A stretch of DNA of 63,527 nucleotides, the filler included, from Choristocarpus tenellus KU-1152 (lineage: Eukaryota; Protista; Phaeophyceae), in assembly GCA_964200185.2 (NCBI GenBank). It is 10 parts of 10 records of this genome, joined end to end, with 100 filler letters (N's around TTAATTAATTAA, not from the genome) between each part and the next. Parts side by side here need not be neighbours in the genome. Positions count along the whole stretch, not along the records: positions 9,563 to 15,713 come from CAXNAD020008819.1; 9 more parts are not named here. The stretch is one strand, 5' to 3'. The translations under genes were made by a program, and so were the position numbers. The notes beneath the pieces were generated by a model. It worked only from the letters and a program-made list of their open reading frames with translations, had not been told where the DNA came from and made no database searches. This document shows, piece after piece, positions 5,053 through 16,165 of the stretch. Every line of letters starts with the position of its first letter. Position 1 is the stretch's first letter.

Positions 5053-8000
5053 AGTATACTATTTACAGTGCTTTACCTTCACATGCAAGAAAAAAAAAAG
5101 ATGAATACCCTTGGCTAAGAACATCAGTGCTACCTGTAACTCGCCCACAAAGACCCTTTTCAAGGCACATATTGGACTATCAAAGGTTATCCAGACCACA
5201 TAATCCTAACCCTAACTCTAACCCTGACCCTAACCCTAATTCCGAACCAGTGGGTGTCACCCCCCAAAAAAAAAACAAAGCGATCATGCCTATCATATAT
5301 CACACAAGAAGGTTGTGTGTATCAAGCAAGCATAGCCCACGGTATACAAAAAAAAACGCCAAAGCAACATTTGAGTTGTAACTACTTGTGTTATGACTGG
5401 AAGTTCATAATTTATCACCAGCAACATCCATAGGAATAGTGTCCCCACCTTGTCCTTCTTCAGCCACATATCCAGTCGCCACTATAGATATTACTTTCAT
5501 ACTTGACCTTTATATGTCTGTGTGCACAGTTGGCATTCCTCGGACATACTTACGCAAATAGAACCCTGGATGCATGGGTCAGAGCTGACAGCTTACCACA
5601 CGCTACATATCGTCAATACCAGTACAATTAATACCAAAGCGGCACAAATATGCACCTGTCCTGCCATGCCACAAACACAAGGCGTCACAATTTCTCCTCG
5701 AGGTTACACAGAGCATGCACCATGCACATGCGCGCGCGCGCGCCTCCTGCACAAGTGCTTCGATAACACCAGTTCCCAGCAGTACCAGTAATATACACAC
5801 TCCAACAGAGAGTTCGCGTTCTCAAGCGTGTTATTGATAGTGGTATAGTGCATTCATACGTTGTAGTATTCAACGAGAATAACATTAACGTGAGAAGAGC
5901 ACGCAACATGCTTTTCTGATGCATACAGGAGGTTACCTATGCTCATGTGACACATGTAAGAACTGTCCAATTACAAGGGCCTGTTTACTGTAGGTGGATG
6001 CATACGGATGTTGAAGGGAGGAATTACGATGCCCAGGGGCTTCAAAATCGTAAAGGGAGACAACGGTTGGGTTTAGATGTATGTCAAGCCCAGAATGAGC
6101 TCTAAACAGTGGACAGGTCTTTGCTGATAACGGTGTATTCAAAGGACCTGCACAAAACGTATACCAAGAGCAGGAGACTGTGCATCATGCGTCCTCAACC
6201 ATGTGCTGGACTCCACCATGAACATGATCCTGAATAGGCACGTGACAGTGGAGGACTGTATCATATCTACATACCCTCTCTCATCACACGAACCTCACCG
6301 TTGAAGCTTTGTATAGATTTCCTCTCAATTCCGAATACGTTCGCTTTCCTTCCATTACTGATTTATCATGGATAGATGGACCACGACATAATGATCTGTT
6401 TTCTTTTCGCTCGCATTTATGACTTTTTGCTAATTCGCTGTGGTCTTCCATGGACACTACATGAACTGTTTCATACTATTAGCACTGCTGGTCTTCGAAC
6501 ACTTTAGCGTTGAAATATCCTTGTTGTAGAGAATAACATCGATAACAAAAACGACATGGTAGGCATTTCCTCCTCATCAAGTACAGTGGTAAGAATAAAT
6601 ATTGTTCCGCATCCTGATTGAGAAATTTGATCGACATGTTCTAAGCAATACCTCCATCCAGTATAATAATTCGCCATTTACACTGCCTCACCCCCAAGTC
6701 AACTACTATATAGTACTTCCTCCATCGAGTCGATTGTCGAACCTTTACAATAATAATAGGTGTTGGAACCGGAGAGAACCTTGTATTGAACATAGTATTT
6801 GTAAGACCTCCTACAATAGAAACAGTAATTATAATTTCAATCAGTTTGGAGACTGAATATTCACGGTATACTTTACCCGTCCTTGATCTACATCTACCAC
6901 TACCACTACAGGCACTATTAATACCCGCAACTACAAAACGTCATACTGGTGCGCGAATACTTGGACATTATTTTCCAACGTAGTTAGGAGTAGTGCCAAT
7001 ACCACTACGACTAAACTACATGCCATACTAGTAGTACTACTACTATTGCTAATAAATACTCAACGATATCTACCTCCCAGCAATACTACCACATGCATAA
7101 TTAATACATGCTGCATGTCGTGTAATGTTGAGTTTGATTATTCATTCTGGACAAACATGTGCAATCATTCTCACCCTCGTAACAACAGGACACTTACATG
7201 TATATTCGTTCATTTATTTGTATCCCTCCTATTCTGTAATTAGATTTTTGGATGTTTTGCTACAACAATTAATCAGCTGATACAATACTCGATTGCCTTC
7301 GTTTATTACCAGTTCCACTAATACTCTACTAATACTAGATAATCTAAGACCTTGTCCTTGGATAGTTGCTGTGGTGCATTTTTCTTGCATCAATCAGTAT
7401 GACCTTCAAAAACTTTGTTTACAAACCAATAACACCTAGTACTATAAGAACGTGCTTCTCCAATAAAATTTTGTAGATGTTAACTGATTTTCCTAATTAT
7501 CTCCTTATCCCGTACTTGACGATCATTTTTCAAAATCCACCCACTCTCAGAGATACGAAAGCATGGGGCCACCTATGCGGCTATGGCAGCTTAAATCTGT
7601 GGACTATGGTGCCAAGGCACACTTAAATTTAATCTTGATATCACGTACAAGGAACAGATGTTACAGGCGAATAGTGCAAGTATTTCTTCTCACGCTCTTA
7701 CCATTGCCAGCAGTAAACGCGCTCGTGGAACGCCAAAAAGGGGATATTCGATTTGCTAGAAGTTGTAGAGTGAGATCTGCTACTTAGAATAAAACGGTTT
7801 TCAGATGTATTACGGCGTCTGTAAACTCAAGATAAATTAACGGTTGACAATACATACGTTGTCACTCTTGATTCATGTCGTAACATTCCCATCGATAAAG
7901 AATATATCTTCATCTGCTGACCTGATATTCGCCATCATGGTTGGACCTTTTCACTGTTGGAGTATCTCAGTCCTGTACAGGTATCAGCACCATCTATAGG

Positions 8001-9562: not shown

Positions 9563-9603
9563 CCATATGGACAGCCGCTACCCCCTCCCAGATACTTTGA
9601 TCC
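9563..9603 (+). mobile_element. MITE family A terminal fragment at contig edge
   Basis: atggacagccgctaccccctcccagatactttgatcc matches the right end of 52726-52906. Confidence 0.7.
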
Positions 9604-9898
9604 AATAGATGACAAGCTTCAAGCCTCATATTGCAACCTCTATGTTAATTACTCCAAAATATGAACATCTACTTACACAACCTCCAATATATCAATGCCC
9701 ATGTAATCATTAGAGGCAATTTGTGTAGCAGCGCCTTGATTGTTCTTGACTTCAAGGATGTTGCCAAACCGCCACACCCTTGCCGGACTAATTTCTTGCC
9801 TAGAAAGGTCTCACTGACACGTTAAGCATTTTGTTGCATTTCATGTGATGCTTTGGTCTCTTTGTGTCTCACGTCATGACTGTGTTGTGCCACTGCAG

Positions 9899-11476
9899 CT
9901 CAACGTCGTCCCCACTACCATTAACGGTACCAGCATCTCCCTCCTTGCGTATTGGATGGAGCAAATAATGGCGGAAGTCACTTCTTTCATCGCGTTTCCG
10001 ATTAAGGTAATGTACAAGCATCTCTCCAACAAATTGAAATGAGACAGAGTGGTGACTTGTTTCATGAAAGCAACGCAGTTTGTTGGGAGATGAAGGCTGT
10101 ACTTCCTCTATGCTCAAAAATGCTATTTTCTTTAGTAGGCCATCCACCCTTGTCAAGTACACCAACTGTACAATGATTCAGGCATTTTAAATGACATTAT
10201 CCCCGTTGACAGTCCTCTACTCTCCTGAACCTCTCCCTTTCAATACCCTCCTCCCTCCTTGTCTCCTTGCCTGACTTTACTGCACGTTGTTTCAGACTCT
10301 CAAGTTTGATCATCTCTGCCAGAACTTCGTTTTACACGAGAAGTTGGACAACTGTGCACCTCTGCTCAGGGCCACAAAGGATGTCACAGGTGAGATCCAC
10401 TTGCTCATGGCAACTCCTTTCTACCCGTTCCTTCTATTGTACCCAACGGGCATTCCCATGCTCCAAGTGTGTTGAATCTTGCATCGTAGTTCTATTCGCA
10501 GTGGGATTTGTAAATAATAAGTATGTGTTCCGCGAAAGGTAGTAAAGCATAATCGACCCTGTGTAGACCTCTGCCACATTAATATATCTTGCTGCCTTTC
10601 AACTCCTAACAAGATAATCTCCAGGTAGAAGAAGCCTTGGAATGATCCCTATTTTCTCTTCTTTCCACACCCAATCTCCCCCCTTTCAGTCGAGAGTGTA
10701 TTTTGTATAGTTGCTACATAGTAGCAAAGAAATTGTGTTTGGTGCAGCTATTGATTGCCCAAGAAGGGCAAAGTAAAAGTTACAGGTATCTTTCTACAAG
10801 GAGTGCACTGGGCCCTCAGCAGGACAATACTCATCGCATCTACCACATTATTCTTGTCTGTGTCCTTGAAGCTCCATCTGTACCAGACCTCAATAAGTAC
10901 AGTCACCTCACTTCAATCATTACTCAATCTGGGCTTGCCTTTTTTTCTGATATGTCTGCAGGCGTTGTAACAAGTGTGAGCCTTACTGCCAACGGAACCT
11001 CTGGTCACATTCCTTTCACGGTCCCGACCGGCACAGTGGTGAGTGACTCTTGTTTCGCTGTTAAACCTACAGTAGAAGGTTCTGTTCGTACTTTGTTTTT
11101 CTCTGCTACTCACTTTGAACACCTGAATCAGATACTACGAAGCATGTGTTCCTGCGCACCTGTTTCCCGTAACACTAACATTTCCCACTACAACGTACTT
11201 TGTTTCCTGCCTCTTACATAGGTGGATATCTCAGGGATTGCTCTCAGTGGTACCACAACGTACGGTTCTGACACCACGTACTACTTCGCCACCGAATCCA
11301 GCATGGTCGAAACACTTAGTGAGGGACCAGTGTCTTCCAGCAAAAAAAGCGTAGATGGCCAACTTTTGGGATTTGAAGGGCAAACCTTTTTCACCTCTTG
11401 GAATGTGGTTCTGTCACTCTCGGGCATGTTAGGACAATATATTTTGATGTCCTACAGCATATTCGGATATTTTTGA
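9899..11476 (+). CDS. Agd3-like (CE18-type) polysaccharide deacetylase, C-terminal exons; 5' part missing from contig
   Basis: Exons 9899-10006, 10296-10389, 10962-11038 and 11222-(up to 11476) have AG acceptors, GT donors for the first three, and matching phases 0/1/0. They give LNVVPTTINGTSISLLAYWMEQIMAEVTSFIAFPIK-TLKFDHLCQNFVLHEKLDNCAPLLRATKDVTG-VVTSVSLTANGTSGHIPFTVPTGTV-VDISGIALSGTTTYGSDTTYYF. This matches from memory the Agd3 C-terminal pattern S(L/I)xxxWxExxxxExxxxxxwPixT...F......DxC...itxVxxTA...IPxTxP...GSD. The end of the last exon is uncertain. Confidence 0.72.
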
Positions 11477-12389
11477 CTCTAGTCAGTCACGTTCATATGT
11501 TTATTTAGGGTGGTGGCACAGAGTCCTCCCGAATCAGTTATTATTTGGTACTGTGAAAACGTTTTTTTCCAATAGCACATTTCGTGCTCCAGGTGTATGT
11601 GTCCCACTAAGTGGTGTGATTGGAAATGCCTTCGAGCATAGAGCTGAATTGCGAGAAAAAGGAGGTCACTTTAAGGTGTAAGTAGGTTTACCTTTTCTCT
11701 AGCATTTAGTGCTTGGGATCATTTGGTGTAATGGTACTATATACTCCTAGTATTCTTGAGGTGTTGATAGACTATTGGCATTGGTGTATAAATGATCCGC
11801 TGTCTTCGTGTTGCAGATGGTATGATGGCTAGCTCTTACTGATGTATTAACAGTGATATATGGGGTGTGCTTCTGCTAGAAGGGGTCTATATTTTACTGA
11901 CTCTTCTGTCTTCTGTTATATGCGATGACAGGACTTTGGAAGTACCCAGATGAAGGATCAAGGTCGCATGTCCTTTTAATCTCCAGATCATTCTGTAAAG
12001 TAGTACACACCAAGAGTAGAGTAACCGCATGTATGGGGGTCTCCCATTGCTGTATCTTGGGTTGTTGCCACTGTTCCCCCTCTTGCTTCGATCTCTTGTT
12101 GTTGCTTTATGTAAGCAACACATGGACTCGAGCATGTGACTGCGAATCTCTTTGGTGGTGAAATGTAATATTATATTTCTTAGGGTAATAAGATTCGAAT
12201 GTTCTTGCCACTTTCCGATGGTCTAGAGAAATCGGAAAGTGTGATGGAGGATATTCTTCTCTAGAATAATTTTTAGCCCCCAAATACCACACATGAATAC
12301 ATTTTTCATTCAGTTTTAATATGCATCCTTCTGGAGGACATATAAATTCAAATTGGAACATTTTTTAAATTGTGTTGAAGGGTTACTGA

Positions 12390-12645
12390 GAGCCAAAGTA
12401 AACAGTAGGTACCCAATTTTTGACCGTTTTGCATTTTTAGCCAGTTTTGCAATCTTTTGCAATCCACCCATATTTCCATGGATGAAGCGCTAAGTTTGAC
12501 CTGAAGAGTTTATTCGTGTTCGAAAGATTTCGACACAATTCAAAAAAATATCCTACACAATTTTGTACAAAAAAAGCCAAATTTTGCACTTTTTTGACGA
12601 GATTCTTAAAATGTAACTTTGGGTACATCTTGCTTACTTCGACTC
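12390..12645 (+). mobile_element. MITE family C, full length (256 bp)
   Basis: GAGCCAAAGTAAACAGTAGGTACCC ... GGGTACATCTTGCTTACTTCGACTC, flanked by TGA/TGA. Confidence 0.8.
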
Positions 12646-14438
12646 TGAAGATAACCTGAAGATGGATATAGATGAAGACTTTTGCTGGTTGCTCTGCCAG
12701 TATCGTGAGGCTCTGTACAAAATTAGAGTGTGGAACTCATCCTTTATCGATTTTTTGTGATACAATTGTGAGGTTGATTTTTTTTTCTCTCCAGTACACA
12801 ATCACTACCAGTATTGCTAATACCTGAAGCTGATGCGTACCTTGTCAGTTGCTGGGTCTTTGTGAGAGGGTTGACATGTGCTTGTCAATTGCACAGTTTA
12901 TGGCGACGAGATTGCATTCTCATTTCAGCGTGTATGATGTACTCTGTAGTATTTCAAGCCCTACCACCATTTGACCTGGGCACACCTTGGGTATGAGCCG
13001 TGAATAGAAAGGAACTAAGTCTTGTAGAGCAAAGATGCGGGTCTGGAATTTGAAGCCGGTGTGAAAAAGGTATTGAAATCAGAGAGTCCCACAAATTATG
13101 TCAGGCCCCGCCTGGCTCACCTAGCTGGTGTCTTTTTATAAACGTGTAGCTACAAGTATGTCTTCAATGATGTGCATGCACTGTCAATAGGGAACGATAA
13201 CATAGGTGAGTAGCTTGTGTTGTCCCACTCACCGAGAGATTATTATAGTACCGTCTTTGTACAACAGAGTCAAGACACAAGCCATGCTCAAAAACACCAA
13301 CTGTCACCACTGTATCAACAACTTATAACCACCAACCAGCGAGCATGGAGGTGGGGGGGAGTAGAACAAGCCAATAATCCCTGTTAATCGTAGGCTCGAG
13401 TCATTTGGGCCTGTGCTACCATTAAACTTTCTCCACTGATGCACACAGTATGAAATTTAGAAAACTATCCGAATAGTGTTAGAGGAAGTGCTCTCATGCC
13501 CTCTCCTGTTATTACAGCAGAAGAGCTGTGATTTTTTCATTGGAATGAAGTTGAGTGAAGTCAAACCTCTCAATATACTCAATTTGAACTGAGATGCACA
13601 TGAGAAATGTGGCGAGGCAGAAAGGCACTCTGATTGGAAAGGGGTACCTCCGGGAGCAAGGCGATTTCTTCTCTAGTGTTCCCATTCACGTGCTCACCTT
13701 TCCTCACTACCATCAGATGCACTACCTATCCTGTTATATATACATACATATATATATGTGTATGTATATATGATCGAGACTTCACTTAACAATGTTTTTT
13801 TGCTGTAGTTTTATGGGACAAAAACGTGTACTTCACATTTGTCGTTGGATTTGGAATTTGGAGTGTTTCAAGACATACACACACACACACACATATGCAT
13901 AACATGCATGTATGTGATGGACTGTAGGAGTGCCATTATTGAAGACATTATGTATACATGTGATGAATGTATTCCATCTAGAGTTTTATTTCAGCATGGC
14001 ATAGATAACTTTACTAGTTTGTGTGCACTAGAGTTTGAGCAATAGTTCAATTATCCCCATGGGCAGTGAGCAACTTGCATAAGTTGCGATTACTGCCTGT
14101 AGCCGTACGCATCAAGATTGCAAGTTTTTAGGTTCCACCATGGAATGAGTCTCAAACCAATAGAGAGGGGGGGGTATGTTTGACCATTTGGGCGCGTTGA
14201 AGACTCTTCTTGGAGTGGTAATTTTTCATTTTGTAAGATATATTTTTTTTCCTGGTGTGTTGCGTTTGACATGTGTTCGCCCAAAAGCATAAACAATTGT
14301 ATGGAAACATTCCTCCTCTCTTTGAATCTTCTCCTTCTCGCATATATGTGTGATTTGGTGTTTCGGTCTAGTGGACATGTTTGCCGCGTTAAATGTAGCC
14401 TTCTGTGTTGTCGTGTGTTCATTGTTACAAAGATAGAT

Positions 14439-14590
14439 GTGCCAAAGTAAATGAGAGGTACCTAGGTTTTGGTAGTTTTGCATTTAAAGTATGCTTTTCA
14501 ATATTCTTCCGAAAAAATTTGTAACTCTTCGCCATTCCTTCGACCTTAACGTACAAAATTTCTGTCATTTTTTCTTATTGATTTGTGAAG
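14439..14590 (+). mobile_element. MITE family C, truncated left part
   Basis: GTGCCAAAGTAAATGAGAGGTACCTAGGTTTTTGGTAGTTTTGCATTT matches the family C left end; right boundary approximate. Confidence 0.55.
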
Positions 14591-15287
14591 GACAAATGAG
14601 GTGAATCATTGCTTGTCTGACATGTGAAGCCTTTGAAAAAGAGCCTGCCCTCAAGTGGATCCATAGAAACAGCTAAGGAGCAAGTTAAATAGGGAAAAAT
14701 ATATTTTGATATGGTACATTTGGAAGTAGCTGAATTGGAACGAGGCTGCAAGGTCTGTGACCTTGCGTTTTCCCAAATTCGTGAGGGTGAAATTTAAGTA
14801 AGATATAAACTAGACGTTCAGCCCTCTACTACAGAGCATTGCACAGGATATAGTATTTGCTTTGCAGTGGGTAGGACAAACACATATGGGTACTTAATAT
14901 ATTTTCAGGTTGCCTACGATGTTATCCATCGTTATTGGTGTATTTGGTCACCTATATTCTGGAGCTTTCCCACAAACTCCACCCTACCTAGCCCGTTGAA
15001 CTGTGGTCAGATGGCAGTGCGTACTGCTCCAGTTCTACTTTACCAGCTACCTGTTGCACTACAACTAATTGCACTGCCCCATGCATGCCCTGATTTTTTC
15101 TCGCACATTGGGTATAGATGCCTCTACCCTGGGAGCAAGGGCAACTAAATTGGTGCAATAAGGGGTAAGATACAATTCCAATCCTTCCACAAAAAACAAT
15201 ACTGTCGTGACCTTTCAACTACCCACATAACGCTTCTGTTTCCTTGATCTGAAGGGTTTTGGGAGCAGTGAGTAGATTTTGTGTATA

Positions 15288-15420
15288 AACAGCCAATCAT
15301 CAAAATTGAGGACGGAGCTTTTTATTGAGATGGGCAAGACCCCGAATGGTGCGCGGAAAGTGCATACATATTTTTGGTCAAGAACATTTCGGTGCTTGTG
15401 GAGGGGACCGCTACGATTTG
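15288..15420. repeat. Dispersed repeat family D (inverted copy)
   Basis: Reverse complement matches 33-161. Confidence 0.75.
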
Positions 15421-15532
15421 GAAGCGACCTAGACCAAGCCAAAGGAAACAAGGACAGACGGCCCCCCCGGGGGGGGGAGCTGGTAACGGTTTGGCATGCT
15501 TATATGTATCATACACTACATATTGCATTATA

Positions 15533-15535
15533 CAA

Positions 15536-15569
<34 letters not shown>

Positions 15570-15582
15570 CATACATACATAC
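15533..15582. repeat. (CATA)n microsatellite
   Basis: Direct reading. Confidence 0.9.
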
Positions 15583-16165
15583 GTCTTCTTCCACTAGTTA
15601 TAAATATATATAAATATTCAAGGGTGATGTGGTTTGTACAAGAAAGGGATAGATAGGTCACACCCACCAAAAAACTAACCAAGTCGACAAAGAAGAACGA
15701 ACACACATTTCACNNNNNNNNNNNNNNNNNNNNNNNNNNNNNNNNNNNNNNNNNNNNTTAATTAATTAANNNNNNNNNNNNNNNNNNNNNNNNNNNNNNN
15801 NNNNNNNNNNNNNCTTCATTAGTACCACTTACTAGATACCTACCCCCCCCCCCTCTTGCCCCTGTGAAACCCTAGCCTGTCCCAGGCCCAGTACAAAATC
15901 AACAAACAATGAACGTGATATTTATGCATTACAGCATAGCAGGCAGATACTAACTATGACCACTGTACCACTAAACTATGACTCCTAATTTATCACAACA
16001 GGGAAGACAAGCAGGCAAAACATGCAAGACAGCACCAACACCTGAATCAAAATCGCAGGCGGCAATAGCCCTCCAAAAACAACCCATCAATTTATTTATA
16101 GTCTCAGAAACCTCTCCTAGTACTATGGTATAGTGCAGCTGGTGCAAACGGATGTACCCACTCAC

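What the first reader, a model, noticed from the sequence alone, without database searches (positions are those of the whole stretch)
9899..11350. Intron-containing Agd3-like (CE18) exopolysaccharide deacetylase in an apparent brown alga
Seen: four exons, each hidden in a separate short ORF of the six-frame track, splice in phase into a stop-free peptide of 135 aa or more. Established: Aspergillus fumigatus Agd3 is the founding CE18 enzyme that de-N-acetylates alpha-1,4-GalNAc in galactosaminogalactan, making it cationic and adhesive; homologues are described mainly in fungi and bacteria. Inference from remembered sequence pattern: this peptide is the end of the Agd3 catalytic domain plus its C-terminal beta domain. 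Brown-algal walls are described as alginate, fucan and cellulose, so an intronised Agd3 homologue would point to an undescribed amino-sugar polymer or adhesion system, or an enzyme acting on microbial biofilm polymers, possibly of horizontal origin. This is the best candidate for a new system in the window.
Basis: partly seen in the sequence, partly recalled or inferred. Interest (0 to 1): 0.8.

Follow-up and report, generated by a model that had tools for sequence, protein, structure and literature searches.

The report
Fungal-type wall deacetylase in brown algae
This is the spliced, transcribed tail end of a brown-algal gene related to the enzyme that makes fungal biofilm sugar sticky; the family is expanded across brown algae and also sits in giant-virus DNA, which hints at an amino-sugar matrix polymer not yet described in seaweeds.

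Summary
Confirmed and extended. Four exons (9899-10006, 10296-10389, 10962-11038, 11222-11476) are joined at exactly the predicted GT-AG sites in a contig of a probable RNA run. Exon by exon, the nearest kin are Choristocarpus tenellus proteins, which share all three intron positions and host repeats: a brown-algal gene, not a fungal contaminant. About 50 algal and viral relatives form one clade. A model of one superposes on all three domains of Agd3 (Z 45, 611 residues), and the six catalytic residues are kept in most. The family is probably orthogroup OG0000186 of the brown-algal genome project: present from Schizocladia on, up to 26 copies, but filed there as WSC proteins. Brown algae also expanded GH114, Agd3's partner hydrolase. 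Intronless copies lie on phaeovirus-like contigs; a further contig pair, viral origin unproven, also carries an Sph3-like gene. Not shown: this copy's active site (outside the piece), activity, substrate, a synthase. Best reading: a secreted metal-dependent de-N-acetylase of an algal amino-sugar glycan. I found no paper that says so.

The parts
9899..10006 (+). First exon in the piece, 36 codons; last part of the CE18 catalytic barrel, starting two codons after the catalytic-acid histidine motif of relatives
   Evidence: Pfam Agd3_CE profile 306-340 of 366, E 0.006; 67-77% identity to C. tenellus paralogues; acceptor position conserved in paralogues; its 5' boundary fits X3 bin depth but no joint row shows it
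10007..10295 (+). Intron, 289 nt, GT-AG, phase 0
   Evidence: skipped in X3 contig; same position in L001, L002, L003, L007, L008, L009
10296..10389 (+). Second exon, 31 codons plus 1 nt; end of catalytic domain and link to the C-terminal beta domain
   Evidence: 68-79% identity to Discosporangiales homologues; mismatches to paralogues fall mostly on third codon positions
10390..10961 (+). Intron, 572 nt, GT-AG, phase 1
   Evidence: skipped in X3 contig; conserved in C. tenellus paralogues, absent in L003
10962..11038 (+). Third exon, 77 nt; first strands of the C-terminal beta-sandwich
   Evidence: Pfam Agd3_C profile 8-32 of 67, E 0.18; 70% identity to P0002
11039..11221 (+). Intron, 183 nt, GT-AG, phase 0
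   Evidence: skipped in X3 contig; conserved position
11222..11476 (+). Last coding exon, 84 codons plus stop; about 37-49 conserved residues end the beta domain, then a paralogue-specific, mildly hydrophobic tail
   Evidence: 43-56% identity to algal homologues over the first 35-49 residues; best 19-residue hydropathy 1.38, tail not conserved; reads on past a site near 11330 where L003, L007 and L009 have a phase-2 donor
11477..12373 (+). 3' untranslated region, at least about 900 nt
   Evidence: X3 contig covers 11221-12373 without gaps
9563..9604 (.). End of a very high-copy host repeat at the edge of the piece; ties the locus to the host genome
   Evidence: summed depth about 76,800 against about 19 for the gene; 95% identical over 38 nt to C. 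tenellus contig L002, with matches in L007 and L008

Best explanation
The piece holds the 3' quarter of an expressed brown-algal gene (host Choristocarpus tenellus or a close relative) of a multi-copy CE18/Agd3 clade. SHOWN: splicing, host, homology, and for the family a three-domain Agd3 fold with the Asp-Asp, His-x3-His, Arg and His catalytic set; many full-length members begin with a hydrophobic, signal-like stretch. INFERRED: the protein is secreted, binds a glycan through its CBM87-like domain, and uses a divalent metal to remove acetyl groups from N-acetyl-hexosamine residues, leaving free amines. The most likely substrate is an alpha-1,4-GalNAc (galactosaminogalactan/Pel-like) glycan made by the alga; the cationic product would bind polyanionic alginate and fucan, or surfaces, and be trimmed by the GH114 galactosaminidases that brown algae also expanded. 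Odds: family is an active de-N-acetylase about 0.85; this copy intact upstream about 0.8; substrate the alga's own alpha-1,4-GalNAc glycan about 0.45.
For: Splicing. Nearest kin C. tenellus, shared introns, shared repeats and 41.8% GC. P0002: Pfam Agd3_CE E 2e-49, Agd3 6NWZ E 3e-33 with all four motifs aligned. Model of P0010 pLDDT 93; Foldseek TM 0.75/0.81; Z 45.4, rmsd 2.7, 611 residues across chain 142-794. All six catalytic residues in 31 of 36 algal and viral rows; the Trp matching Agd3 W344 in 35 of 36. Probable orthogroup OG0000186: 0 copies in four outgroups, 5 in Schizocladia, 7 in Choristocarpus, up to 26. GH114 averages 5 genes per brown-algal genome, unexplained. Agd3 homologues travel with GH114 and Spherulin-4 in bacteria, and with an Sph3-like gene on L016/L021.
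Against: No catalytic residue lies in the piece, and the closest paralogue (L008) has a TT instead of GT donor and a model lacking the His pair, so damaged copies exist. No synthase or partner gene is called beside any algal copy fetched. GH114 orthogroup count is 0 for C. tenellus; Fucus and Sargassum have GH114 but none of this family; the copy-number correlation within brown algae is weak (rho 0.43, p 0.065, not corrected for kinship). Kelp mucilage work highlights glucosamine, not galactosamine. Identity to Agd3 is only 22-26% and the CBM87 profile is matched far below cut-off (E 0.05), so specificity may have shifted.
Confidence: 0.5

Rival explanations
1. Same chemistry, different own substrate: it de-N-acetylates GlcNAc in an algal glycan or glycoprotein, perhaps ahead of N-sulfation, as the deacetylase half of animal NDST does.
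For: Second-best structural match is human NDST1 (Z 23.6). Kelp mucilage holds 3-13 mol% glucosamine. Brown algae have an amplified orthogroup annotated as glucosamine N-sulfotransferase-like, 5 copies in C. tenellus. A weak sulfotransferase gene lies on contigs L010-L012 and a GT2 beside the gene on L013-L015.
Against: Agd3 is a far better match than NDST1 (Z 45 against 24); Agd3 is reported specific for alpha-1,4-GalNAc; GH114 expansion and the Sph3-like neighbour point to galactosamine; mucilage glucosamine may be microbial.
Confidence: 0.22
2. It acts on foreign polymers: it deacetylates Pel- or GAG-type matrix of epiphytic bacteria or fungi so that algal GH114 enzymes, which cut deacetylated stretches, can clear the biofilm.
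For: Ega3/GH114 is specific for deacetylated regions. Only modifying and cutting enzymes are evident in the algae, no synthase was found. Tandem expansion and WSC fusions suit defence genes.
Against: Deacetylation makes such matrices more adhesive. The family appears together with the alginate wall toolkit, in the Schizocladia plus brown-alga ancestor. Viral copies fit a host-cell polymer better than an epiphyte's.
Confidence: 0.15
3. This particular copy is a decaying or non-catalytic paralogue that is still transcribed.
For: Its tail is unlike any relative's and reads past a site spliced in others; its closest paralogue looks damaged; the active site cannot be seen.
Against: 177 codons without a stop, three canonical introns precisely spliced, differences from paralogues enriched at third codon positions; tails vary widely in the family anyway.
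Confidence: 0.12
4. Fungal contaminant or an integrated virus gene rather than an algal gene.
For: Fungi are the nearest known group (tree); intronless relatives occur in giant-virus DNA (59-62).
Against: Exons match algal proteins far better than fungal ones; introns shared with algal paralogues; single-copy depth and one contig running into host repeats; tree places the nearest kin in a Discosporangiales clade at 100.
Confidence: 0.01

Closest known systems
Aspergillus fumigatus Agd3 (CE18 + CBM87; PDB 6NWZ; PMC7229062, PMC4817252)
   Same: Three-domain fold, all four catalytic motifs, the W344-equivalent aromatic, signal-like N-terminus (shown on algal relatives).
   Different: 22-26% identity; long separate branch; CBM87 and C-domain below Pfam cut-off; many cysteines, WSC fusions and variable tails; multi-copy; no five-gene cluster seen; substrate untested.
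Bacterial agd3 genes in Pel-like operons (e.g. Chloroflexia locus L020)
   Same: Agd3_CE domain; Spherulin-4 neighbour also on L016/L021.
   Different: More distant than fungi in the tree; operon with PelF-type GT4, PelG and GH114, none of which flanks the algal genes fetched.
Orthogroup OG0000186 of Denoeud et al. (bioRxiv 10.1101/2024.02.19.579948, Table S3)
   Same: Very probably this family: best hit a Diaporthe 'extracellular serine-rich protein', WSC label, tandem copies, and C. tenellus contigs 546, 971, 1630 against my loci on contigs 547, 969, 1623 (96, 100, 32, 41, 42).
   Different: Filed as carbohydrate-binding WSC and discussed among wall mechanosensors; the deacetylase core is not mentioned. 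The match of orthogroup to family is my inference from names and contig numbers.
Heparan sulfate N-deacetylase/N-sulfotransferase NDST1
   Same: Related deacetylase fold, Z 23.6 over 433 residues.
   Different: 13% identity; no sulfotransferase domain in any algal member listed.

Membership tests
CE18 (Agd3 family) | Sequence homology to the Agd3 catalytic domain | tested here: met
   Window exon 1 E 0.006, below cut-off; nearest relatives P0001, P0002 E 3.5e-34 and 1.9e-49, far above it; exons colinear with them.
CE18 (Agd3 family) | Catalytic motifs CM1-CM4 (D377, D378, H510, H514, R613, H668) | tested here: inconclusive
   Met for the clade (31 of 36 rows complete). Not testable for this copy: all six lie upstream of the piece.
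CE18 (Agd3 family) | Three-domain architecture: CBM87, distorted (beta/alpha)7 barrel, C-terminal beta-sandwich | tested here: met
   Model of relative P0010 superposes over chain 142-794 of 6NWZ; the window shows barrel end and beta domain (8). CBM87 by Pfam only E 0.05 (89).
CE18 (Agd3 family) | Metal-dependent de-N-acetylation of alpha-1,4-GalNAc | not testable with these tools
   Needs an assay.
CE18 (Agd3 family) | Secretion | tested here: inconclusive
   Hydrophobic N-termini in many full-length relatives by a simple hydropathy scan; this copy's start is outside the piece.
GAG/Pel biosynthetic system | Clustered synthase (Gtb3/PelF GT4), epimerase, GH114, GH135 | tested here: not met
   No other gene called on five short algal contigs or evident in 11477-15713 (2, 4, 75). 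Unlinked partners could not be searched; GH114 is expanded genome-wide.
NDST | Fused sulfotransferase domain | tested here: not met
   No such Pfam domain in any algal or viral member.
Fungal or viral gene | Nearest kin fungal, or intronless gene amid viral genes | tested here: not met

The most novel reading that the evidence does not exclude
Brown algae make an undescribed, partly deacetylated alpha-1,4-galactosamine polymer (a GAG/Pel analogue), a cationic partner to their anionic alginate and fucan. The CE18 clade was gained with the brown-algal wall toolkit and explains the puzzling GH114 expansion; phaeovirus-like giant viruses carry the deacetylase, and perhaps an Sph3-like hydrolase, to remodel that polymer.
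Probability: 0.35. Interest if true: 0.9.

Novelty: new variant of a known kind. Interest (0 to 1): 0.68.

Why it matters
Brown-algal walls are described as alginate, fucans and glucans; a recent survey of their wall enzymes notes GH114 as abundant without a role and never mentions CE18. An expanded, catalytically conserved Agd3 clade dating from the origin of the group gives a direct, cheap test for a missing cationic amino-sugar glycan, relevant to spore adhesion, wall cross-linking and seaweed-microbe contact. It would extend GAG/Pel-type chemistry to a third major lineage and to giant viruses, and re-label a family now read as WSC sensors. The single locus is ordinary; the weight lies in the family.

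Tried and rejected
My first guess of a bryophyte host (GC 42%) was wrong. Word search with exon 4: no candidate. PDB sequence searches of single exons: only chance hits to fragilysin, a membrane phosphatase and plant LRR repeats, rejected. Atlas searches of exons 1 and 4: nothing usable. Exon 1 too short for locus search. Repeat pattern absent from metagenomes; no Rfam hit. No Agd3-like fold in BFVD, no match in phage records, no relative of the L016 Spherulin-4 gene in viral contigs. No further homologous exon downstream of exon 4. GPI or membrane anchor for the tail: considered, not supported (weak hydropathy, not conserved). The careful tree did not finish; only the quick tree is reported. 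One clade for the 11 viral/environmental rows was not rejected (p-AU 0.234), so number and direction of transfers are open. The split gene on L016/L021 was left as it is; no viral consensus or mended gene was built or used.

Full report
Observation. The piece (9563-15713, GC 41.8%) holds four short + strand exons with clean acceptors and donors: 9899-10006, 10296-10389, 10962-11038 and 11222 onward. Their phases (0, 1, 0) keep one frame. Three public runs of one study hold the stretch. X1 and X2 cover it, introns included, at about 19 and 6, with one X1 contig running from 10143 into repeats at 12983. X3 has a 1701-nt contig at depth 64.5 that skips 289, 572 and 183 nt at GT..AG ends, exactly the three introns, and continues without a gap from 11221 to 12373. 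The joined form is not in X1 or X2, so X3 is best read as RNA, though its library is not on record. The last exon therefore ends at the stop at 11474-11476, giving 177 codons in the piece, and about 270 nt of that contig lie upstream, outside the piece.

Identity. Scanned singly, exon 1 hits Pfam Agd3_CE near the profile's end (E 0.006) and exon 3 hits Agd3_C near its start (E 0.18): right order, below cut-off. The word search and the Atlas left this open, so the large search was run with exon 1. Its best hits were P0001 and P0002, both Choristocarpus tenellus, with Agd3_CE at E 3.5e-34 and 1.9e-49. P0002 matches Agd3 (6NWZ) at E 3e-33. All four exons align in order to P0002 at 72, 74, 70 and 43% identity, each above 300 shuffles. 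The joined peptide was left out of all searches.

Host. All three intron positions recur in the C. tenellus paralogues that reach that far (L001, L007, L008; the first two in the truncated L002), and some in Discosporangium and another locus. The high-copy repeat at 9563-9600 is 95% identical to a C. tenellus contig end, other repeats match L007 and L008, none match the Discosporangium locus, and GC equals that of L001. The host is C. tenellus or a near relative; no database protein equals the exons, so this is a further paralogue or an orthologue. Fungal proteins score much lower.

The family. P0002 and an alignment found about 50 relatives at 39-71% identity, from Choristocarpus, Discosporangium, Sphacelaria, Undaria, Cladosiphon, Scytosiphon, Hapterophycus, Pylaiella, Ectocarpus and environmental contigs, several per species, some fused to WSC domains; fungi follow at 26-31% (both capped at 8000 candidates, so absence elsewhere is not shown). 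Agd3's catalytic residues are D377, D378, H510, H514, R613 and H668 (PMC7229062); all six are present in 31 of 36 algal and viral rows. A model of Discosporangium P0010 (pLDDT 93) matches 6NWZ at TM 0.75/0.81 and Z 45.4, rmsd 2.7 over 611 residues spanning all three domains; human NDST1 is next at Z 23.6. The CBM87-like domain is thus present though too diverged for Pfam. In the window gene itself all six residues lie upstream of exon 1 and are unseen.

Tree. A quick maximum-likelihood tree of 68 rows, window gene not included, gives one algal-plus-viral clade (100) on a long stem, sister to fungi, with bacteria outside; Discosporangiales copies group at 100. The base of the algal clade is open and long branches meet, so the donor is not established. 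The patchy range fits a horizontal origin, which remains inference.

Viral copies. Several relatives are intronless genes on contigs with VLTF3, D5 helicase, A22-like resolvase and hybrid histidine kinases (L010-L012, L022; related IMG/VR loci L017-L019) or with a GT2, RING fingers, an EsV-1-7-type repeat and a hybrid kinase (L013-L015). Hybrid kinases are typical of phaeoviruses; the hosts are not known. On L016 and L021 the gene is interrupted by an HNH endonuclease frame and lies 4 kb from a Spherulin-4 gene similar to Sph3; these two contigs show no viral hallmark, so their origin is unproven. One clade for these rows is not rejected (p-AU 0.234).

What is known. The founding paper lists homologues only in fungi and bacteria. 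UniRef already names Ectocarpus proteins after the Agd3 domain. The brown-algal genome paper and the wall-enzyme survey never mention Agd3 or CE18 in their text; one supplementary row, in a file cut when stored, lists a single CE18 in Pleurocladia. Its Table S3 has orthogroup OG0000186, labelled WSC, best hit a Diaporthe 'extracellular serine-rich protein', absent from four outgroups, 5 copies in Schizocladia, 7 in Choristocarpus, up to 26; its C. tenellus contig numbers nearly match my loci, so I take it to be this family. GH114, which in fungi cuts deacetylated GAG, is also amplified in brown algae without an assigned role. Counts of the two correlate over 24 species (rho 0.61) but weakly within brown algae (rho 0.43, p 0.065), uncorrected for kinship and with clear exceptions, C. 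tenellus among them. Searches of the open library turned up no paper linking Agd3 or galactosaminogalactan to algae; subscription journals are not covered.

Mechanism. Shown: an expressed, spliced algal gene in a clade with the Agd3 fold and catalytic set. Inferred from the family: secretion, glycan binding, metal-dependent removal of N-acetyl groups, giving a cationic polymer. Inferred more weakly: the substrate is an algal alpha-1,4-GalNAc glycan that binds anionic wall polymers or surfaces (0.5 for the reading as a whole). Rivals are a GlcNAc glycan with possible N-sulfation (0.22; kelp mucilage has 3-13 mol% glucosamine), foreign biofilm polymers (0.15), and a decaying copy (0.12). No synthase was found; the system test for GAG/Pel clustering is not met.

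Verdict. A real gene, rightly read by the first stage; a new variant of CE18, in brown algae and giant-virus DNA, visible in automatic annotation but apparently undiscussed. Interest 0.68, carried by the family and by a direct test for a missing wall polymer.

Noticed in passing
L010-L012, L017-L019, L022 (gene at about 10001-12547 in L010): Intronless Agd3-like genes in a conserved giant-virus block next to a hybrid histidine kinase, A22-like and D5 genes; none in BFVD reference structures.
   Followed up: partly
L016:3601-10506 and L021:3587-13261: Spherulin-4 (Sph3/GH135-like) gene 4 kb from an Agd3-like gene that is interrupted by an HNH endonuclease frame on the other strand; neighbours of 1109, 525 and 726 aa have no clear family; origin of the contig unproven.
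   Followed up: partly
L013:545-5966: Agd3-like gene divergent from a cellulose-synthase-like GT2 gene on a phaeovirus-like contig; cluster of 33 members, one from an NCBI assembly (P0085), possibly an integrated virus.
   Followed up: partly
L008:13063-14531: Closest paralogue has TT where the first donor GT should be, its model stops there and lacks the His pair, yet the three later exons are present; damaged copy or assembly error.
   Followed up: partly
L020:3724-13174: Complete Pel/GAG-like operon in an uncultured Chloroflexia genome: GAF protein, GT4 with DUF3492, PelG, Agd3, GH114, Spherulin-4.
   Followed up: yes
window 12335-12660, 14380-14560, 15240-15500: High-copy host repeats (summed depth up to about 40,000); 12392-12456 and 14441-14505 are 72% alike; some match C. 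tenellus contigs.
   Followed up: partly
window 11326-11365: Exon 4 reads through a degenerate donor used by three relatives; the following residues resemble the next exon of paralogue P0009 in register, suggesting intron loss or gain among paralogues.
   Followed up: partly
window 10194, 10263, 10524, 11523-12252: Single-letter differences between the window and the runs, in introns and the 3' UTR only; allele, strain or assembly differences.
   Followed up: no
window 13731-13904, 15509-15600: Simple TA/CA/TACA repeats.
   Followed up: no
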